Notes: generated by a model not told the origin, from the letters alone. Positions 7,823 through 54,742 are shown, numbered from the stretch's first letter. The stretch is DNA of 64,000 nucleotides from Podarcis cretensis (GCA_951804945.1 OX638157.1:55180001-55244000), one strand, 5' to 3'. Translations and numbers: made by a program.

Positions 7823-9218
7823 CAGAGTATCCACAGCCCTGTTGAATAAATGGAATATTCATGCAAGCAAGACTCTCTCTACTCTGTTAGATCACCGCAA
7901 AGATAAAACAATTTATGGCACTTTAAAGAATATCCAATTATGCTCATGTAAGGTGCTACAAAGTAGTTCTAAATGCACTGTTTCCTGTCCCAAATGCACA
8001 GTAAATGGTGTTCTCACCAATACTGTAAGATCACCACAAAGTAACAAAGGTACACAACACATGCGCACAAGAAAGATTTTCATTCCCAGATGGAAAACCA
8101 AGATGCAAGTTCCAACAGTGTTGAATTATGGCAAAATAAGCAGCACAGCAGTAAAACTGTAATTAGATCTCTATTCAGAAAGTACTAAAAGGGGCTCTTT
8201 CCTAATAAATACATGCATATTTTTTTAAAATAGAAAAAATGATGTATATCTCTTCTGGAATTTTCTCACTTGAAGTCATACTCAGATCTGCACAAATCCA
8301 GGGTATATGTCAGCATGAAGTAGCTTTTGCACAATTCATTTATTGTACTCCTATTCGTTTCTTGTATTGCAAACGTGAATATCTTACAGGGTATTTATTT
8401 GCCTTTTATTTTGATCGAAGACCATGCACTGCACCTTACAAGTGTCAAGACAATCCAACTCTGCAATTTTAGATCCATTAATTCAGCAAAGTAGAAATTA
8501 TTCCCATTCCTCTTCTGATATTTGCATTTAAACATGACTTATGCAATAATATTTTTAAACAGCTATTGAATAGCTAGAGTGCATTTATCATAACTAACAG
8601 GGAACACCTCAAAACATTCATATAGTCTTAAAACACAAATTCATGCTAGTAAATGCTCATGGCTGTTGATGCTGTTAATTCCTGCAGGGCCAAATGCTCT
8701 TCATTATTACACAACAAGCAAAATGCTTGTGAATATGATGAGCAAAAGAGCCAGAGATATTTGTATATTGCAGGTTCTACTGGTGGCATGCAGAGACACG
8801 TATTTCCTCAAATGGGAATCTCACTCAGCACAACTTTGGCAGCCCAGTGTTTGGGCCAGAGAGCATGTTTGGCCGCCACTGCATATCCTCGAGATGGGAG
8901 CAAAATCTGCCCTTCACCCCCGGGAAACTTTCTATTGGATCAGCAGCTCTGTATTTTACCCAACAGCTTTGCCAATTTGGGCCAGTTTTCTTCGTACTTA
9001 ATGGGAGTAGCTGAAATTGGACCAGGTCCTATTTACTTTAGGTTTCCGGCGTTTGTCACACTAGAGCGTGACAAACAGATGGTACCTAAAAACTGATTTT
9101 TATTACATACGGCTACAAATGTACCAGTTACAGATAGGTAGCCGTGTTGGTCTGCCATAGTCAAAACAAAAAAAATTCCTTCCAGTAGCACCTTAAAGAC
9201 CAACTAAGTTAGTTCTTG

Positions 9219-9256
9219 GTATGAGCTTTCGTGTGCATGCACACTTCTTCAGATAC
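9219..9256 (-). ncRNA. Minimal type I hammerhead ribozyme motif, sense to USP46 mRNA
   Basis: Exact reverse complement of 9615-9652. Confidence 0.75.
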
Positions 9257-9614
9257 ACTGAAACAGAAGTTTCCAGACCCTTCTATATAGTGAGAAGGTG
9301 GGGAGGGGTATTACTCAGAAGGGTGGTGGGAATGGGTGATTGGCAGATAGCTGTGATGAGCCTGTTGACGACTCTTAACGACTGCAATAGGTCTTACAGG
9401 AAAAAGCAAGGGGTGAGAAGGTGAAAAATGGCTTTGTCATGTATAATGAGATAAGAATCCAAGGTCTTTGTTCAGACCAGGACTCTCCATGGTTAAGAGT
9501 CGTCAACAAGCTCATCACAGCTATCTGCCAATCACCCATTCCCACCACCCTTCTGAGTAATACCCCTCCCCACCTTCTCACTATATAGAAGGGTCTGGAA
9601 ACTTCTGTTTCAGT

Positions 9615-9652
9615 GTATCTGAAGAAGTGTGCATGCACACGAAAGCTCATAC
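9615..9652 (+). ncRNA. Minimal type I hammerhead ribozyme motif (PLE-associated)
   Basis: GUAU-CUGAAGA-A-GUGUGC AU GCACAC-GAAA-GC-UC-AUAC. Confidence 0.75.
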
Positions 9653-11097
9653 CAAGAACTAACTTAGTTGGTCTTTAAGGTGCTACTGGAAGGAATTTTT
9701 TTTGTTTTGGCTACAAATGTAGTACATCTTTGTGCAATGGCACATAATTTGGCTCTCAGTGCAATCGGTGCCATCTGTCCAAGTCCAGAGCTCTGCATAA
9801 TATGATGGATATTCACTTAAATCCAGGGATTCCGATCTGCCTGTAGGATCACTTATGTGCCCATGATGGATCCCCAAACACCAGGAAGAATGAGAAACTC
9901 CTCTTTGCACGGAGCTCTGCACCAAAATCCTATGGAGCTTTGGATCATGGTCACTATTGCTTAATTGGATTGTACAACCAATACTTGCTTGCATGCATGA
10001 TACTCATATAGACATGTGCAAACTCAGGTAAGCAAGGACATTTTGTGGTATTTCTTTGGGATAAAAGGATACTATCACTCATCACACAGTGAAAGTAACA
10101 TGGAAGAGCAACTCCCCCCCCCTTTTCTTTTCAGTGCAAAATCTCCTAAAGCCTTTTACAGTGTGGGAATCCAAAGGAGCAGTTTGGCTGATCTGTGCTG
10201 TCACATGATAAACAGGAAGACTGGTGGAATTTGGTTCAAACAGGACTGAGCGACGTTGTGTTTTGTGGCTGCCAATTTGATATTGTTTCATGACCCAAAG
10301 CTTGTGGGGGATCGGGAGATAATAATTTTCTAGTTGAAGAGTACCATGTGACACAATCCACAATCCAATCAGATTGAGGATCCATGAATATGAGTTACAT
10401 TTCAGTAGGTATCTAAAGCAGCAATTTCCCAAACGTTCCAACTTAAGGGAACACTTTTCACATTGATTGCTCTGCCTAGGAACCCTTGTGCATTTGCCAG
10501 AGTTCTTGTAAAAGAGTAAGGTATTCTAGGCTGCACATTTCATTTGGAGTGTTGGCTAGGTTTCCTGGGGCTCACTACTGTCCTGTGTGAACACTGAGAG
10601 TGCCTCCTAGGACACAGCCCAGTTCTCCCCACAGTTGCCCTTTAAAGGTGAAGATTGGTAGCTGCAGACAAGCTGCCATTAAGGGATGGATGTCTACCAT
10701 TACTATTGCATCTTCTCATTGAGGAACCCGATAGGCATCTCAGGAATCCCAAGGTTCCTCAAAACATGGTCTGAAAACCACTAGCCTAAAGGAATGGTTC
10801 TTTAGAAACAGAGAACAAATGGTCCTTGGTGGTGGTGCAAACATCTATGCCACATTATACCTCAGTTCAGCAGGATTCAGCAAATGAACACGAGCTGTAT
10901 AAATTTGTTCTTGCAGTAGTTAATGAGATTCAGACTAAAGAAAAAAAGATCTTCCAGTCAAAGATGGAGAGTCTTAGTTCAATTTCGGCATGAGCTTATC
11001 ACTGTCATACTGTATTGGATGAGTCTACATGGAAGTCAGTTAACAGTGTTGGTCAGTTTCTCCTCTCGGGGTGGAAAAAGTCAAGTGTCTTCCCAAG

Positions 11098-11199
11098 TCA
11101 CTCTCTTGACTGATAAAATAAAATATATCCAGATTCTGAATTTTTAGATATATCAGAGGTCAGACCATAAAATTCTTCAATAGCCTGCGCATCGATTTT
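11098..11199 (-). CDS. USP46: USP46 exon 9 coding part ([33 protein letters not shown])
   Basis: Acceptor tttgcag|AAA; TGA at 11100-11098. Confidence 0.97.
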
Positions 11200-14100
11200 C
11201 TGCAAAGGTAAAACAATCAAAATGTTAACGGAGAAAAATTAAGGAAATGGATGTAACAATATCAAAACAAATAGGATTTGCCCAAGGGAAAATTCTGTTA
11301 GAAATTTAGACAAGGTGGCAAAATAGTTGTCCAGTTCCTTCCAAACTCTCAATTTATGTAACAGTTAGAGATAAACTTATCTTTTAAATGCACAGAGGCT
11401 GGCAAGTTACTGCAATAGCTGCAGACAGCTGAGATCTTTCTCCTGTTTGTGGTTGGAGTGACTTGCAATACAAACTTTTTGTGGGGCATATTTATTTCGC
11501 ATTGTCCAATTGAGAAAGAACATCAATTAACTTTATTCCATCCAAGTCCCCTCTATCTTCATATATAGACCTTTTGTTCAACTTATTACTGACTACAATT
11601 TCTTCCTCTAATCCTTTCACCAAGACAATGAGCAGGTAGGCTATGTGATACAACTGGGTATGCAAATATAAACCAACCAAGTACAGATAGCTAAAGGCCT
11701 ACGTAATCCTAGCTGCCTTCAGGTTACAGCTACTTGGTTCAAATATATTTTGCATTCTGTTGCAGCAGGGCCCTTCTGTATTAATCATCATTTTTATTTT
11801 TCAAGTCTATGATGTGCCCTTTACTCCTTTGTGGGAGATTTTATTTATTTATTTATTCAACCCCTCCATATAAAATAATAGGCTTGTGTACAGCAAAATA
11901 CACAGGTGCAACAAAACATAAAATACCATAATCACAATATAAAATAATCATACAAATGACTGGCTCAACTTGAAATAGTTTAAACAACTGAGTAGGCCTG
12001 TTGGCATGAAAAGGTCTTCAAGAAACATCGGAGGGCAGGGTGAGGAAGAATCATTGTTTGCGATGATGTTCCATTTATCAAGAGGGTAACTGGTTATTAT
12101 TCTACTTGTATTTTTTTTCCATTTTATCTTGGGCTGATTATGCTATATGCAACTAAAATTAGCTTGTGGGGGTCAGGAGAACCCGCCAGAACAGTGTGTG
12201 GAGGGAGGAGTGGGGGGGGGATAATTCAATTCAATCTGGCAAGCGAAAAAGCTTGTGCCAATGGAAGAAATGCCAAGGTGCTACATTGAATTATCAGAGA
12301 AAAGGGTTCTATCTCAGGGCTGCTGTGCTGGTTTTCTCTTGGTGGAGAGTTTTTTTAAGTAGGAAGAAAATTAAAAACAGAATCCTCTATCTACACCCTG
12401 GGGGGATTCCATCCATTCTGCTATCTTGCTCTGTTGCATATGTAGATTAGGCTGTAATGAACACCTGAGAGTAATTAAAAATTAGGATCCTTGCAGAAGT
12501 CCCATTGGTTTTTATGTTTTCCAGTATTGGGGGCTTGCTCTTATAAGCTACATCCCAGGAACAAGTATACTGACCTCTACAATGTCATCATCAAACAATA
12601 GCCAAAAGCCATGACTTTTCACAATGGTAATATAATGTCCACGGTTAGGTCCACTAAAAGAAAAGAAACATCATTAAATTAAAAAAAAGAATAAGGGCAT
12701 AACTGAATCAACCTTCTAGACATAAAAGTTTCATTCCCTGCAACTATAATTCTCCCCTCCATGGTATAGTCTATAAAATGTTAAGGCTTGAAGAGGCGAA
12801 TTCCATCTTCTCCCACATCCAATTTATTTTCCATCTCTGTTTCAACTGATACCTTAACATTATGATTTTCAGTCAAGGTAGTTCATATGTGCTTGTTATA
12901 CCATTGGGGTAATAATAATAATAATTTAATTTACAAGCTTATATACACCAGAATACCTAGGTAGTCCCTCAAATGTGTAGAAACCACATTTTTGGGTGCA
13001 GAAACCCTTATTTTTAGGTGGCCCTGTTTTGCTTCCAAACTGACAGGCACTCCTGAATACTAAAGGCAGTGCTTTTTTCTGGGGGTACACATACCCCTAA
13101 ACATTGTGTGAATCTAAGTTTGGCCTCATTGAGGGGCAGTATTTCAAAATCAGTAGGAAAATGAGAGTACTGCTAAACATTTTTTTAGAAAAAAAAGCAC
13201 TGACTAAAGGAAATTATACTGCTTCTTCTGCACAGGATTTATTTTCTTTAATGAAGCATCGATCTTGCCTGTGGTCAGATTGATGCTTCATTAAAGCATC
13301 AATCTGACCACAGTCAGACAGCAGAATTTACAACAGCAACTTACACTGCATCAGCACCAAGGGGCAGACGCAGTAGATGAAATTAAAAATTCCCTTTAAA
13401 CTTATTTTCATTAAAAATAGCACTCCTTCAGTTAAAATCTATGTTCCAGAGTTTAACATCAGTACTCATTCATCAACCATCACTGTCACTGCAGCCTGTC
13501 TTATCCTCGTTGCCATAAAACAGAATTTTAAGACAGGCCTGGCGATATTCAGCAAAAAGGTATTTAACATAGGTTTCTTCTGAGTGGCTGGGTAGTTTCC
13601 TTAGTAACAGTTGAATTAGCTCTCTTTGGGTATCACGATACAGCAGGCAATGTAGAAGAATGTGCCAAATGGGACAATCCCATCAGAATTACATGGAAGA
13701 AGAAGAAGAAGAAGAAGAGTTTGGATTTGATATCCCGCTTTATTACTACCCGAAGGAGTCTCAAAGCGGCTAACATTCTTCTTTCCCTTTCTCCCCCACA
13801 ACAAACACTCTGTGAGGTGAGTGGGGCTGAGAGACTTCAAAGAAGTGTGACTGGCCCAAGGTCACCCAGCAGCTGCATGTGGAGGAGCGGGGAATCGAAC
13901 CTGGTTCCCCAGATTACTAATCTACCACTCTTAACCGCTACACCACACTGAACACCATCTCTCTTCCACTGGGATGTCATCATATGTGCCCTCTAATAAT
14001 GCTGAAGGGAGAACAGTAAAGCAGGCTCTAGAAAATGCCCAACAGTGTTCAGAACTGTCCAGCGCACTTAAATCATTTGCTGGATAGGATTTTTAGTGTT

Positions 14101-17100
14101 CGTGTTAAGAGTTTATAAATGAAGTAGAATGCTGCTCACCTGCCGCAATGAACTACTACAGCCACCAAGTCATACATGCGATCCAAGTTGATAGCATCCC
14201 CGGATGTGTTGAAGAGACGCAGCTCGAGAGGAAATACCACGCGGTAAGAGAGCTTGGTATACCGATGTAACTGCTCCATGTATTTAAATCTCTTCAGGTG
14301 CAATGCAAGGATCATTGGCAGCTTTTTGACCCTCATCCTATGAAGTCAAAATAATATCACTGGATAAGAACAAAACCTGTGCAGGTTTTTGTTTTTTTCT
14401 TCCAAAGGGGAAAAAGCAACCAGCAATTATTTGTTATAAAAGCTATTTTTTAAAACAAACAAACAAACAACAACAGTGTAATACTTTAAATGCGCACAAA
14501 AGGGAGTCCATGATATCCATAATAAAAATGTAAAATTATTAAGTGCCCATTCTATTTATAAACAGGTCCCTATTCTTGATACGGTGTTCCCACATAGGCA
14601 CACCTCTGTTATTGTTTTTTTGCAGAACTGAAAGCAGGAAGAATTCATTTTATTTCAACCACTGCTTTAAAATTTATACTAGCCTCCCTGGGACCAGGCC
14701 ACAAGGTGCTTTGCTTACCTTTTCTGTGCCTCTTGTTTGCTGCAGCAAGTCTCACAGTAGTACTTTTGTTCGCTGCACAATGTTTCTGTGTTGCTGAAGT
14801 CTCTGAAAAATCAATGGAGGGAACAGTGCTTACAGTTTCATACTTCCCATCCCAAATGCCCCCTGAGCTGGTTGCAAAATATTGTACAGTTGCTTGACTG
14901 TAACTCAAACACAGTGGTCAGAGAGAATATACTTGCAGGATCACCTTACTTGAGAACTGTTAAGGGCCCTAATCTTCTCACTGAGCTATGATTCTCAGAG
15001 TGGTTTAACTCTCAATCCCTCTTTCCAGGGAGCTCTGGGAATTATAGTTTTGTGAGGGGAAGAGGGGTCTCCCAACATCTCTGAGAACCTGTAACACACT
15101 ACAGTTCCCAAAATTCTTTGAGGGAAAGCAGGTCTCTTTAAAGTCCTGCGGTGCTGCTTTAAATGTATAGTACAGATGGGCACTCATTCTGCTCTTCAAA
15201 TTTTATTGAAGTGTGGTTTTCACAGGCATAAGAAATGCTTGTTTTACATTCAACAGATGACAGATTACTTCATTTTGACCTAGCTAAAATAAAACTTCTA
15301 ATTTCTGGATAAAAGCTAGACATATAAACTATTCTTAGACAGAAATATGCTGGAGGTGTTGGTTTATTCATGGGGCAAATGCTTTTCTAAGAAAAAAAAA
15401 TAGAGAGGTAAAACTGACAGAACCAGCTGGCCTTTTCAACTCCTCGTGGAAATAAAAATAATTGATACATAATTTATTGTGTTATTTTATGAATTCCTCT
15501 TTTAATGCCAGCACTGATGCCCAGAGGAAAAGAACTATGTTTGGAGGCTTAAACACAAAAGGGCTTTTTCTTTCAACGATAACTAAGAGGAAGGAGAGTT
15601 TGCTGTAGTATTAAAGGGAAGCAAGACTAATTGAGCTATTGCCTCTGAAATAGCTCCTGTTTACTTATTTCTCTTTCCTGCTCAACACTGTTTATACAAT
15701 TAAGGTCAAACAATGCCGTTTCTGTTCTCAAACACGGCAATTATAATTTCCAAAATACACTTGGGAAACCTGCCAGCTAAAGGTTCATTTCCATTGCACA
15801 TGTGAGCAGACGTGTTTTGAAGTCACTCTATGTTAAGAGCTCGTACTCTTACAAGGGGTTAACTACAATGAGTCCAAAATCTTAATACAGTGGTACCTCG
15901 AGTTACAAATGCCTCAGGTTACAAACACTTCAGGTTACAAACTCCGCTAACCTGGAAGAGTTACCTCGAGTTGAGAACTTTCCCCAGGATGAGAATGGAA
16001 ATTGTGTGCCAACGGCAGCAAGAGGCCCCATTAGCAAAAGCACGCCTCTAGTTAAGAACAGATTCAGGTTAAGAATGAACCTCCAGAACGAATTAAGTTC
16101 ATAACTAGAGGTACCACTGTAGAGGTGAAAAGGTGAGCTTGCAAAGCAATTTGTAAATTTTAATTTTAATTTAAAACAGTAATAAAAACACATGAAACAG
16201 GAAAAAGTACACATCTTGCCCACCAGAATGCATCACGTTCAAAATAGAAGGGGCCATAACATTGAAGTGAAGATAAAAGATCCATATCGTTGTCATTTAT
16301 GCCATAGCATGTGTCCAAAAAAAGATGCAAGCACACCTGGAGGGCACTTCCTGTTTATCCAGGCATTTGATGGATGAATGATGCTGTTCCTGGCAACCTT
16401 GAAATTATTAGCTTTGAGGGTTTTTGACTCTTGTACTTTTTTTATATGATCATGATTGGTTAAAAAAAACAACACATTTTGGATTATTTTAAATGTTTCA
16501 AATGTTTTATTTTCGTTCATATCGTTTTGCTACTTTGGTGTTGGCTTTGCAGCGCCCATTTGGGAAGAAGGACAAGAGGGAAATTTAAGAAGTAAACAAA
16601 TGCCAGTAACATTCACAAAGGTTATAAAACAATGCAATGCACTTTCCGGACCAAGCACAAGGGAAGTCCCAGATAGAGTGCATTATGGTAGTCCAGTCCT
16701 GAAGTACTCTTCTGAAAATGCTTAGACTTTGATGAGTTTCCAGGATAAGGAAGACAAACAACTGTGGAAATGGTACTGAGAGTGCTTCTCTACATCCAGA
16801 TTCCCACACGAAAATGGGACAACCAAGAACAGAATGTATGACCCGCTAAGCCAGGGGTGGAGATCCTCAGATCCAGAGGCCAAATTCAGATCTCCATGCA
16901 TCCCGTATGACTTTCCCCAGGCCACAGCCCCCCTTCAGCCACACCCTCCACCACTCCTGGTGGAGCTTCCTGCAGCCAATCAGAAGCTGCAATTTGGTTT
17001 TCGAATGTTTTGGAAGTTGAACGGACTTCTGGAATGGATTCGGTTCAACTTCCAAGGTACGACTGTATAAGCATTTGGGAAAGAACTTGCGCCTCATGAT

Positions 17101-20100
17101 GGGAAGCAGAAGAGAATATGATCCCTTAGGTAAGAGCTATGTTTCCATGTAGATGGACTCATGCAGTCACCTGCCTAAAGAGCTGAAGCAATAAGCCTGA
17201 GAGAGAATGCATGTGTGTGTGTGTGTGTGTGTGTGCACATGCACAGGCAGGCAAAGGGGGATTTTTGTCTTCCAAGTATTGTTAAGTCTTGGACCCAACT
17301 GATAACAAGCCTTGAGGAGGTTCTGAACTCGGAAAGATGTGTTAAATTGAACTCTTAGTTCAGTATAACTCTGGTAAATCTAAATTCAAAGTTGTATTTA
17401 ATTCAGTGGGACCTAATGGATGCTTAACGACTTCTTTCAGATTAACTGCTGTGATAAATAAAGTTTTCTAATACTTGGGATTAATGCTCCATATTATTCA
17501 TCAGTAAGCCCTTTGATTGACAGATGGTAGATTACTTTCCCAGGAAGTACATGTTATACATGCATGCACACCATTCTCAAGCTATTTGCTCCAGAGTAAA
17601 TCTGCTGCCTTCAGTGGAACCTCCCTGAAGTAAGCAATCAAAAGATTGAAAAGCTGTAGTTTCTTCCTGAATATTCAGTTGCAGCAGGATTGATTTGTAT
17701 TCCTACTTCCCCCCAAAAAAGTTCCATTTATATTTCTTGATTTGATTTATGCCATATCATACCGTAACTCTCATGCTGCTCTTCCTTTCAAATCCCACGA
17801 ATCTAAAATGATCAGACAGCAAAAACCTACTCCCACTTTTTTTCAACACACATTTCTGCAGCCGCTCATTTACCTTAAGCAATGAGTAATCGATGTGTTC
17901 TGCTCCACATCAACAGAGAGATCGAGGAAATCTTCATCTTTGCTGCTAACCTGCAACAAAAATAGGAGGCAATAATATTTCTGGGCACTGCACAGCCAAC
18001 AGCTTGATCCTAAGACTAGCTGCACCAGCAGAGCAAATGCCTACCATTATGTCAGCACAACATCAAAACCTAGAAGAAGATGCCAACATTGCAGAAAGAA
18101 TTAAGCAGTGGGGCAGATGAGTACACCAAAACAAAACAAAAAAATTCCTTCTAGTAGCACCTTAAAGACCAACTAAGTCAGTTCTTGGTATGAGCTTTCG
18201 TGTGCATGCACACTTCTTCAGATACACAGTGTATCTGAAGAAGTGTGCATGCACACGAAAGCTCATACCAAGAACTGACTTAGTTGGTCTTTAAGGTGCT
18301 ACTAGAAGGAATTTTTTTGTTTTGACTATGGCAGACCAACACGGCTACCTATCTGTAACACCAAAACAAGTTATTAAAAAGTTTAGGTTCAAGTTGTTGA
18401 GGTGAATGGTCCTGTCTTTGAAAGCAGTTTGGGAAAAGGAGGCATATTAATCTCTTGCAGCTCTAAGATGGGATACCTAAGCAATGGTTTGTCTTCTGTA
18501 ACTATGGTTACAGAAATGCCTTCACTGTAGTTAAGGACTGAACACAAGGTCATGAAACTGTGATTTGAGGGTGTGTGGCTTTTTTGCCGACCAAGGTTTG
18601 TTTTAGCATAATTGTTACACCCGTATTGAGTATAGCATTTCCCCTTCCTCTCCAGCCTTCCTGCAGAGGCCAGACAGTGTACTGAACTTCATATTTTGAG
18701 AGGCCGTCTATAGCAGGTTCTGCGAACCTGGTGCTCTCCTGTGTTTTCGGACTACAACTTCCATCGACCCTAGCCAGTTGTCAAAGACTTTTCTATAGGA
18801 TGTTGGCCACAGGTTGTGAAATATTGCAAAGATAAGCACCAGGACCTTGAGCTGAGCAGAAGAAGCCTGCAATATCAGTTGCATATGACCTTACTTCCCT
18901 GTGCCTGTCAGGAGAGCAAACATTCTGTAGCAATTGCAGCTTCAGAGTTGTCTTCAGAGTTGCTCTTGGTGGTGCTCCCCAGTAAGGGGCAGTGCAATAA
19001 TCAGTCCTATAAGTTATAAAACCACAATGAAATCCCCCCTTCTCCGAAAAGAGGAGTCTGCATAAACTCCAGCACTGCTGCTACGTCCTTATCCAGGAAA
19101 GGGCCAAGAATACCCTCTAACTCTGGACTTGCTGAGGTAGAGAAATCCCTACCGCACCACTCACAACCAATGCTCCAAAGACCCCTTCCAATACCCTGGG
19201 GCTCCCTACCAGCCTCACCTCCATATAAATGGCCCAAGCTATGGCTGTTTTAAAAGTCTCTCTCTTCAATTTCTCTGAGTTGTGAGTACTGTTATAAGTA
19301 GATCAGACCTAAATGTGGATCCCTACTCTCTAGTGCCATTGCTTTGATCCAGTTACAGGTTCTCTTGCTCATATTGTGAGGTGCTTTAAGAAATGCTTGT
19401 GTTTACATAATGTCACAATCCCTTTTGTACGTTTGCTTATACTGCTACCACTAGACCCATTTTTCCCTGTTTGAAGGGGAGAAATAGATTGCTTCAAACA
19501 ACAAACATTACTTGTTACACACAGCAGAAATAATACCTTGTAACTACTTTATATTGAAAGAATATTTGCTTATTTCAAGAAACTGATTATGGCAAAATCT
19601 CATAAATACAGTAATTACCGTATTTTTCGCCCCATAGGGTGCACCAGCCCATAGGGCACACCTAGATTTTTTTTTGGGGGGGGAATAAAGAAAAAAATTA
19701 TTTCCCCCCCAGCGCGGGGCTGGAGCGGGGGAAGCCCGAGCTTCCCCCGACCCCAGCCCCCAGAACAGGCTGCTAACTGGAAGCCTAGGGAGCCCGGCGG
19801 GAAGTCGTGCCGGTCTCCCCAAGCTTGCGGATATCTGCCCGAAGTTGCGCAGCTCTCCAACGGCTTGCAGAGAGCTGCCTGCATCATGAAGCCTGGGGCG
19901 CGCTGAGCTCAGCGCGCCCCAGGCTTCATGATGCAGGCAGCTTTCGGCAAGCCTTGGGAGAGCTGTGCGACTTCGTGCAGCTCTCCCACGGCTTGCCGAG
20001 AGCTACGCGAAGCCCGAAGCCTGCAGGCTGCTCTCCGCAAGCCGTGGGAGAGCTGCACGACTTCGCGCCGGGCTCCCACGGCTTGCGGATAGCTTCCTGA

Positions 20101-51236: not shown

Positions 51237-51371
51237 AGCCCCTTAAACATTGCGCGCCGCAAGCGTCCCGTGCTTGAGGTGGTCAACACAGGGGGGCAGA
51301 GGATCCCTCTCACTGAAACCCGGGGCAGGGCTGCCGCCCTCTGCTTCCGGATCCTGTCGTGAGAGACACGT
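51237..51371 (+). ncRNA. Second, diverged GC-rich SNORA26 paralogue (H/ACA snoRNA)
   Basis: H box AGAGGA 51298-51303, ACA 51366-51368. 3' hairpin CTCTCAC/GTGAGAG with pocket TGAAAC...ATCCTGTC. Shares CTTAA, GTGCTT and CAACACA with the 54625 copy. Confidence 0.78.
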
Positions 51372-54624: not shown

Positions 54625-54742
54625 TTGCCCTCTTAAGGCTGGTGGTGCTTTAAGTGGCCAACACAAAGGGGTAGAGTAATTCTCTCTTAAACCCAGAGGC
54701 GAGAACGCAGCTTTCCTCTGGATCCTGTCGGGAGGAACAAAC
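54625..54742 (+). ncRNA. SNORA26: H/ACA snoRNA SNORA26
   Basis: Two hairpins, H box AGAGTA 54673-54678, ACA 54737-54739. Motifs TGCCC..TTAAGG..GTGCTTTAAG..AACACA..AAACCCAGAG..GGATCCTGTC resemble human SNORA26 as recalled. Confidence 0.88.

What the first reader, a model, noticed from the sequence alone, without database searches (positions are those of the whole stretch)
9111..9721. Hammerhead-bearing Penelope fold-back hairpin inside the predicted USP46 3'UTR
Seen: 218-bp inverted arms (1 mismatch, 112-nt loop) with a 13-bp TSD, indicating a young insertion. Each arm carries a minimal type I hammerhead (stem I GUAU/AUAC, CUGAAGA core, stem II GUGUGC/GCACAC, GAAA, palindromic AGCU stem III). 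I saw no AATAAA between the USP46 stop and the insertion, so canonically polyadenylated mRNAs should include it. Known: Penelope-like elements carry minimal hammerheads that typically need dimerisation, and long 3'UTR duplexes are ADAR/Staufen/Dicer substrates. Inference: the mRNA carries a sense ribozyme motif (9256-9219) that is transcribed after, and sequestered by, its own antisense copy. This could be a latent cleavage or dsRNA switch on a conserved deubiquitinase transcript.
Basis: partly seen in the sequence, partly recalled or inferred. Interest (0 to 1): 0.8.

Follow-up and report, generated by a model that had tools for sequence, protein, structure and literature searches.

The report
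Young Penelope retrotransposon insertion in USP46 3'UTR
This is a very recent insertion of a lizard Penelope-like retrotransposon in the tail of the USP46 gene, missing from at least one other individual; its ribozyme motifs and hairpin shape are normal hallmarks of such elements, not a regulatory switch.

Summary
There are 218-nt inverted arms with one mismatch, a 112-nt loop and a 12-13-bp target-site duplication. An identical 38-nt minimal type I hammerhead motif lies in each arm, on opposite strands. No AATAAA or ATTAAA lies between the USP46 stop (11098, minus strand) and the insertion.

The anatomy is that of a Penelope-like element (PLE) insertion. A 5'-truncated sense copy (minus strand) carries a 38-nt tail at one end only and is joined head-to-head to a shorter, tail-less inverted copy. 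A second fold-back of the same family, with the same asymmetry, lies at 18132-18359.

A DNA run from another individual of the same organism label holds the exact empty site (9110 joined to 9709). The insertion is therefore polymorphic and cannot be a conserved USP46 regulator.

Stranded RNA-seq from a diverged relative covers 11090 down to 7000 continuously on one strand, so the site lies inside the 3'UTR. It sits 6 nt upstream of an AATAAA that looks like a proximal poly(A) signal. No RNA run known to come from a carrier was laid, so editing, siRNA and cleavage are untested.

The single sense hammerhead would be locked in a hairpin of about -459 kcal/mol, so self-cleavage is very unlikely.

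The scan noted a similar old Penelope fold-back elsewhere in this genome. Verdict: an ordinary, young PLE insertion.

The parts
9111..9123 (.). Left copy of the target-site duplication, GGCTACAAATGTA
   Evidence: The X16 empty-site contig joins 9110 directly to 9709 (table 8, record 11).
9124..9161 (-). 38-nt 3' tail of the sense PLE copy, present at this end only
   Evidence: The tail sequence is found once per insertion, here and at 18324-18359. This matches the 30-40-bp one-sided tail of PLEs (PMC8557442, PMC11167929).
9162..9379 (-). Left arm: body of the longer, sense-oriented, 5'-truncated PLE copy, in the same orientation as USP46
9219..9256 (-). Minimal type I hammerhead motif, sense on the USP46 mRNA strand. 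The predicted cleavage site is after C in AGCUC|AUAC.
   Evidence: All core nucleotides are present. No Rfam hit.
9380..9491 (-). The 'loop': a further 5' part of the longer PLE copy, not a separate spacer
   Evidence: High-depth repeat contigs run from the left arm into it (X1 record 3, 9316-9418; X16 record 13, 9357-9443). Reads of other copies continue past 9494 into a consistent sequence (tables 7, 8).
9492..9709 (+). Right arm: shorter, tail-less, inverted 5'-truncated PLE copy ending in ...GTTTTG
9615..9652 (+). The same hammerhead motif on the plus strand. It is antisense in the USP46 mRNA.
9709..9721 (.). Right copy of the target-site duplication
9099..9104 (-). First AATAAA downstream of the USP46 stop, 6 nt beyond the left duplication. 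It is a probable proximal poly(A) signal.
   Evidence: In the single-cell RNA-seq run X19, depth is about 11-16 at 9740-10150 and about 2-5 below 9054 (table 2). This is suggestive only.
11098..11220 (-). End of the last USP46 coding exon (...[32 protein letters not shown]), with the stop at 11098-11100
   Evidence: The last 35 residues are identical to PDB USP46 chains. The exon at 14139-14336 also matches USP46 best.

Best explanation
This is a recent, still polymorphic insertion of a 5'-truncated Penelope-like retrotransposon (PLE) into the 3'UTR of USP46, and it has no evolved host function.

How it arose is partly shown and partly inferred. The anatomy is shown. The mechanism is inferred from published PLE biochemistry. 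The PLE endonuclease cut both DNA strands about 13 bp apart in AT-rich DNA. Each 3' end then primed reverse transcription of PLE RNA from an internal start site. One strand started at the distal site, which gave the copy 9494->9124 with its 38-nt tail. The other started at the proximal site, which gave the copy 9492->9709 ending in GTTTTG. Both cDNAs stopped short and were joined head to head, which made 218-nt inverted arms around a 112-nt loop.

The hammerhead motifs are the element's own pseudo-LTR ribozyme, carried along as passengers.

In carriers, every canonically polyadenylated USP46 mRNA should contain the hairpin. Any effect it has would be that of a long 3'UTR duplex, not of ribozyme cleavage. 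This last part is inference.
For: Anatomy:
- Arms, loop and target-site duplication are as described.
- The tail is present at one end only, and the same asymmetry is seen in a second insertion at 18132-18359, whose arms are 96 nt and 100% complementary.
- The two insertions differ in arm length (218 vs 96 nt) by truncation at the centre, and in duplication length (12-13 vs 7-12 bp). That is expected of target-primed reverse transcription.

Literature on PLEs:
- An inverted 5'-truncated copy and a 30-40-bp tail, often at one end only, are typical (PMC8557442).
- The Anolis PLE protein cuts and extends both strands, and the tail is the stretch between two reverse-transcription start sites (PMC11167929).

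Hammerhead motif:
- That paper also reports pairs of motifs 100-700 bp apart on opposite strands.

Polymorphism:
- An X16 contig of 1354 nt lies on 7901-9110 and 9709-9853 with no gap between the two pieces and 99.8% identity. This is the exact empty site (table 8).
- The same organism label holds 0.98 of the sampled words in X15 but 0.90 in X16-X18.

Repeat family:
- Summed contig depth over the arms is about 10^4 times that of the flanks, and loose ends run into many different flanks.

3'UTR position:
Against: - No reverse transcriptase or GIY-YIG endonuclease reading frame lies in or next to this copy. The autonomous parent could not be fetched, so the PLE assignment rests on structure and on the ribozyme motif.
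- Rfam hammerhead models do not score the motif.
- The four motif copies in the window are identical, so there is no covariation evidence.
- I did not lay X15, the probable source sample, so the fold-back itself has no read-level confirmation.
- Absence of a host function is argued from polymorphism and youth. It is not measured.
Confidence: 0.88

Rival explanations
1. The insertion allele changes USP46 output in cis through its 218-bp RNA duplex. Possible routes are ADAR editing, nuclear retention, Staufen binding, translational repression, or altered use of the adjacent proximal poly(A) site. This would make it a natural expression variant. It would be a consequence of the insertion, not an evolved switch.
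For: - The site is transcribed in the USP46 sense in a relative.
- No canonical poly(A) signal lies upstream.
- The predicted hairpin is about -459 kcal/mol.
- The base of the hairpin lies about 53 nt upstream of the AATAAA at 9104-9099.
- Inverted Alu pairs in mammalian 3'UTRs have such effects (PMC4378195, PMC11263572, PMC7566578, from their abstracts only).
Against: - No RNA run known to come from a carrier was laid, so there are no editing, small-RNA or allele-specific data.
- The effects of inverted Alu pairs vary by gene and cell type.
- Non-canonical poly(A) sites upstream of 9721 are not excluded.
Confidence: 0.25
2. The sense hammerhead at 9256-9219 cleaves USP46 mRNA, constitutively or when the hairpin is opened.
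For: - The catalytic core is intact.
- The Anolis PLE hammerhead cleaves when its own protein is added (PMC11167929).
Against: - Only one sense copy is in the transcript, although these motifs need a second copy to build helix III (PMC4209133, PMC6765202).
- The hammerhead fold is worth about -6 kcal/mol, against about -459 for the hairpin.
- Even in a dimer, the palindromic helix II duplex (-30.6 kcal/mol) beats the double-hammerhead fold (-11.1).
- Activity in vitro is low even for dimers.
- No reads ended at the cleavage site in Anolis RNA-seq.
Confidence: 0.03
3. It is a fold-back or MITE-type DNA transposon with long terminal inverted repeats, not a retroelement.
For: It has long, nearly perfect inverted arms flanked by a target-site duplication.
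Against: - The termini are asymmetric: a 35-38-nt tail at one end only, in both copies.
- The arms differ in length between copies by truncation at the centre, not at the ends.
- The duplication length varies between copies.
- The arms carry a PLE-type hammerhead.
Confidence: 0.02
4. The palindromic arrangement is an assembly or library artefact laid over a simpler insertion.
For: - Inverted repeats are a known artefact of some long-read preparations (my own knowledge).
- I did not lay X15, the probable source sample.
Against: - The structure is flanked by a clean duplication and has exactly the published PLE anatomy.
- A second, independent copy shows the same anatomy.
Confidence: 0.03

Closest known systems
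Penelope-like elements of the Penelope/Poseidon type, such as PAc of Anolis carolinensis (PMC11167929), and the general PLE insertion anatomy (PMC8557442)
   Same: - An inverted 5'-truncated copy joined to a sense copy.
- A 30-40-bp tail at one end only.
- A target-site duplication in AT-rich DNA.
- A hammerhead motif close to the 3' end of the inserted unit.
- A high-copy, dispersed family.
   Different: - This copy has no reading frame.
- In PAc the ORF starts at stem II, with the cut site 26 bp downstream. Here the only ATG in stem II opens a 9-codon frame, so the family is different or non-autonomous.
- The clade was not determined.
Minimal hammerhead ribozymes of metazoan PLEs (Cervera & de la Pena 2014, PMC4209133; Lunse et al. 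2017, cited in PMC6765202)
   Same: - Type I topology with a short helix I (4 bp).
- An unpaired nucleotide between A9 and G10.1.
- A G10.1-C11.1 pair.
- A palindromic AGCU in place of helix III, which implies action as a dimer.
- Pairs of motifs on opposite strands a few hundred bp apart.
   Different: - Helix II is 5 bp in the monomer (the paper reports 6-8 bp), and it is part of a 14-nt palindrome that favours an inactive dimer in silico.
- Activity was not tested.
Inverted-repeat Alu pairs in mammalian 3'UTRs (PMC4378195, PMC11263572)
   Same: A transposon-derived long intramolecular RNA duplex inside a 3'UTR.
   Different: - It was made by a single insertion event, not by two separate insertions.
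- The arms are nearly perfect (one mismatch), where Alu pairs are diverged.
- The host is a lizard.
- It is polymorphic.
- No editing or retention data exist.

Membership tests
Penelope-like element insertion | Inverted 5'-truncated copy adjacent to a sense copy (complex inverted insertion) | tested here: met
   Arms are 218 nt with one mismatch. A second copy has 96-nt arms.
Penelope-like element insertion | 30-40-bp tail, often at one end only | tested here: met
   A 38-nt tail at 9124-9161 and a 35-nt tail at 18325-18359, each found once per insertion.
Penelope-like element insertion | Target-site duplication and an exact empty site | tested here: met
   A 12-13-bp duplication. The X16 contig joins 9110 to 9709.
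Penelope-like element insertion | Hammerhead motif in the pseudo-LTR | tested here: met
   The motif lies 57 nt upstream of the proximal end (...GTTTTG) and 95 nt upstream of the tail end.
Penelope-like element insertion | Family linked to a parent that encodes reverse transcriptase and a GIY-YIG endonuclease | not testable with these tools
   This copy has no Pfam-matching reading frame. The family continues 5' of 9494 in other copies (table 7). The rest of the genome could not be fetched.
Hammerhead ribozyme (PLE minimal type I) | Conserved core: C3 U4 G5 A6 N7 G8 A9, G12 A13 A14, A15.1-U16.1, and H17 not G | tested here: met
   CUGAAGA ... GAAA, AGCU, then C before the cleavage site.
Hammerhead ribozyme (PLE minimal type I) | Extra nucleotide between 9 and 10.1, a G10.1-C11.1 pair, and a palindromic 15.2-16.2 | tested here: met
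   (descriptor hit with extra=1), set against the criteria in PMC4209133.
Hammerhead ribozyme (canonical; Rfam Hammerhead_1, _3, HH9, HH10, _II) | Scores against a curated covariance model and has a stable helix III | tested here: not met
   No hammerhead hit at the gathering score, or at E up to 10. In a monomer, helix III would be a single A-U pair closing a 2-nt loop. It is therefore not a canonical monomeric hammerhead.
Hammerhead ribozyme (any) | Self-cleavage, and covariation that supports the helices | not testable with these tools
   The four copies in the window are identical, and there is no bench assay.
3'UTR inverted-repeat dsRNA element (like inverted Alu pairs) | Both arms transcribed within one mature mRNA, with A-to-I editing or dsRNA-protein binding | tested here: inconclusive
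   The site is transcribed in the USP46 sense in a relative. No run known to come from a carrier was laid.

The most novel reading that the evidence does not exclude
The fold-back is a segregating cis-acting variant of USP46. It places a near-perfect 218-bp RNA duplex about 53 nt upstream of the gene's proximal poly(A) signal. This would shift poly(A) site choice, editing, nuclear export or translation of a conserved deubiquitinase mRNA. Because the same population holds both carrier and empty alleles, it would be a natural test of what one PLE fold-back does to a host transcript.
Probability: 0.2. Interest if true: 0.4.

Novelty: new member of a known kind. Interest (0 to 1): 0.2.

Why it matters
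It matters mostly as a clean, datable example. The insertion is polymorphic and has an exact empty site. Its two arms begin at the two reverse-transcription start sites inferred for PLEs, and a second copy in the same gene shows the same asymmetry. That supports the model in which both DNA strands are primed during PLE integration.

For USP46 it is at most a candidate expression variant. It does not bear on conserved regulation of the gene, and it is not a new ribozyme class.

Tried and rejected
- Rfam, at the gathering score over the whole window and at E up to 10 over 8900-9950, gave no hammerhead. The only hits were SNORA26 twice and one chance snoRNA match.
- Pfam on the three longest reading frames inside the element gave nothing. 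I take them to be spurious.
- The bacterial promoter/terminator scan gave nothing and does not apply to an animal genome.
- An earlier-findings search by sequence came back blank.
- Lunse et al. 2017 (PMC5785218) is not held, so I cite it only through PMC6765202.
- My first dot-bracket for the double hammerhead was invalid. I redid it.
- From I could not tell whether the RNA runs X21 and X19 (organism A) carry the insertion. The joint table was cut to the 15 deepest joints, and repeats swamp the arm bins.
- I considered and rejected three readings: a MITE or fold-back DNA transposon, an assembly artefact, and LINE-style twin priming. Twin priming gives an inversion of different parts of one RNA, not duplicated arms that each reach a 3' start site.

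Full report
**1. Observation**

- The repeat finder reports arms 9158-9379 and 9492-9713, 222 nt, 99% complementary, 112 nt apart. It also reports the direct repeat that ends in GGCTACAAATGTA at 9111-9123 and 9709-9721.
- A base-by-base check finds two mismatches in the 222 nt. The one at 9161/9710 is where the element meets the target. The only internal one is 9362/9509.
- The 38-nt motif GTATCTGAAGAAGTGTGCATGCACACGAAAGCTCATAC stands at 9615-9652 (+) and 9256-9219 (-), and again at 18231-18268 (+) and 18225-18188 (-). Shuffles give zero matches.
- A structural descriptor for minimal hammerheads finds these four sites and nothing else. It finds nothing in 200 random windows.

**2. The gene**

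- The minus-strand ORF at 11098-11220 ends in [32 protein letters not shown] followed by a stop. Its last 35 residues are identical to solved USP46 chains.
- The exon at 14139-14336 also matches USP46 best, with USP12 just behind.
- Two SNORA26 copies lie at 51250 and 54625 on the plus strand. From my own knowledge, this fits the USP46/DANCR neighbourhood.
- USP46 therefore runs on the minus strand, and the insertion starts 1,377 nt downstream of the stop.
- On the minus strand there is no AATAAA or ATTAAA between 11098 and 9721. The first AATAAA is at plus-strand coordinates 9099-9104, only 6 nt beyond the left target-site duplication.
- The insertion itself brings in no canonical poly(A) signal on that strand.

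**3. What the element is**

The two halves are not symmetric.

- On the minus strand, the left half runs from about 9494 down to 9124. It ends in a 38-nt stretch, ACTATGGCAGACCAACACGGCTACCTATCTGTAACTGG, that the right half lacks.
- The right half ends in ...GGAATTTTTTTTGTTTTG, directly at the target-site duplication.

A second insertion of the same family, at 18132-18359 in a USP46 intron, has the same asymmetry.

- It has 96-nt perfect arms 1 nt apart. One arm ends in GTTTTG and the other runs on for 35 nt of the same tail.
- Its tailed arm is on the opposite strand, and its duplication is 7-12 bp.
- The tailed arms of the two insertions are about 98% identical.

The 112-nt 'loop' is part of the longer copy.

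- High-depth repeat contigs run from the left arm into it.
- Reads from other copies continue beyond 9494 into one consistent sequence (tables 7 and 8).

This matches the published anatomy of Penelope-like elements.

- There is often an inverted 5'-truncated copy next to the sense copy, and a 30-40-bp tail that is often at one end only (PMC8557442).
- The Anolis PLE protein cuts and extends both DNA strands and starts reverse transcription internally. The tail is the stretch between two start sites (PMC11167929).

I infer that each DNA end was primed at a different start site. Two of two copies here agree with that.

No reading frame with a Pfam match lies in the element, as expected of a copy truncated to under 400 nt. 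I could not reach the autonomous parent.

**4. The ribozyme motif**

Read as a type I hammerhead, the motif has these parts:

- Helix I is GUAU/AUAC (4 bp).
- The core is C3-A9 = CUGAAGA, followed by an unpaired A.
- Helix II is GUGUG/CACAC with a CAUG loop, and has G10.1-C11.1.
- Next come G12-A14 = GAA, then A15.1-G-C-U16.1 = AGCU, then C17. Cleavage would fall before AUAC.

These are the features that Cervera and de la Pena list for metazoan PLE minimal hammerheads, including the extra nucleotide and the palindrome in place of helix III. They also note pairs of motifs on opposite strands 100-700 bp apart.

No Rfam model scores it. It is not a canonical monomeric hammerhead.

Predicted energies:

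| Fold | kcal/mol |
|---|---|
| Monomer hammerhead fold | about -6 |
| Forster-type double hammerhead | -11.1 |
| Dimer through the palindromic helix II | -30.6 |
| The 556-nt hairpin | about -459 |

**5. Age and population status**

- Run X16 carries the same organism label as X15, which holds 98% of the sampled words.
- X16 holds a 1,354-nt contig that lies on 7901-9110 and 9709-9853 with no gap between the pieces. It has three differences and one gap (table 8, record 11).
- With 31-letter words and a 13-bp duplication, such a contig can only come from reads of an empty allele.
- The insertion is therefore absent from at least one allele in another individual.
- Together with the single arm mismatch, this shows a very recent event.

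**6. Transcription**

No RNA run carries the window's own organism label. The RNA runs I laid carry another label, organism A. In the unique flanks they differ from the window at many fixed positions, roughly a few per cent (table 3).

- In the stranded run X21, every unique bin from 11090 down to 7000 is covered (depth about 2.5-20). Coverage is on one orientation in all but two bins, and is the same just below the stop codon as 4 kb further on (table 2).
- The site therefore lies inside a long USP46 3'UTR.
- In the single-cell run X19, summed depth is about 11-16 at 9740-10150 and about 2-5 below 9054. That is what a 3'-tag library would show upstream of a poly(A) site next to the AATAAA at 9104-9099. 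I did not confirm that X19 is a 3'-tag library.
- X21 reads C at 9101, which turns the signal into AATGAA, and its depth drops less there.
- I saw no poly(A)-tailed reads, because the tables were cut, so the proximal site is probable and not shown.
- I could not tell whether organism A carries the insertion.

No run known to come from a carrier was laid. Editing, small RNAs and cleavage ends are therefore untested.

**7. Reading**

The fold-back, the target-site duplication and the ribozyme motifs are all explained by one PLE integration event.

- It is Penelope-like.
- It is young.
- It sits in the 3'UTR.
- The mRNA would carry one sense motif behind its antisense copy.

The proposed switch is not supported:

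- The insertion is polymorphic.
- The sense motif has no partner and would be buried in the duplex.
- Published PLE hammerheads cleave weakly, or only with their own protein, and left no cleavage ends in Anolis RNA-seq.

What remains open is an ordinary consequence. A 218-bp duplex about 53 nt upstream of a probable poly(A) signal may change the output of the carrier allele, as inverted Alu pairs do in mammals (abstracts only). I put that at about 0.2-0.25.

**8. Limits**

I draw nothing from that gap.
- Depth over the arms is a sum over repeats and is not a copy number.
I used it only as context.

Noticed in passing
window:18132-18359: A second fold-back of the same PLE family in a USP46 intron. 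It has perfect 96-nt arms 1 nt apart, back-to-back hammerhead motifs, a 35-nt tail on the right only, and a 7-12-bp target-site duplication (ACCAAAA core). It is about 98% identical to the 9124-9260 copy.
   Followed up: partly
window:9099-9104 (minus strand): An AATAAA lies 6 nt beyond the insertion. In the single-cell RNA-seq run, depth is 3-5 times higher in the 400 nt upstream than downstream, which suggests the proximal USP46 poly(A) site. One RNA lineage (X21) has T>C at 9101, giving AATGAA, and shows a smaller drop.
   Followed up: partly
window:9046-9075 (minus strand): An 11-bp hairpin, GUUUGUCACGC / GUGUGACAAAC with a UCUA loop, lies about 25-50 nt downstream of that AATAAA, near where cleavage would be expected. 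The repeat finder lists it as I2, and it forms in the minimum-free-energy fold of both alleles.
   Followed up: no
window:51250-51371 and 54625-54742 (+): Two SNORA26 matches, at 45.6 and 99.2 bits. This fits a DANCR-like snoRNA host gene next to the USP46 5' end.
   Followed up: no
window:9124-9713: RNA reads of the PLE family lie on both orientations at similar depth in the stranded run X21 (about 125 vs 118 in the 9055-9191 bin). Copies of the family are therefore transcribed in both directions genome-wide.
   Followed up: no
window:9231-9244 and 9627-9640: Helix II of the motif is a 14-nt perfect palindrome, GUGUGCAUGCACAC. In cofold it forms an intermolecular duplex (-30.6 kcal/mol) that competes with the active double-hammerhead fold (-11.1 kcal/mol).
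   Followed up: partly
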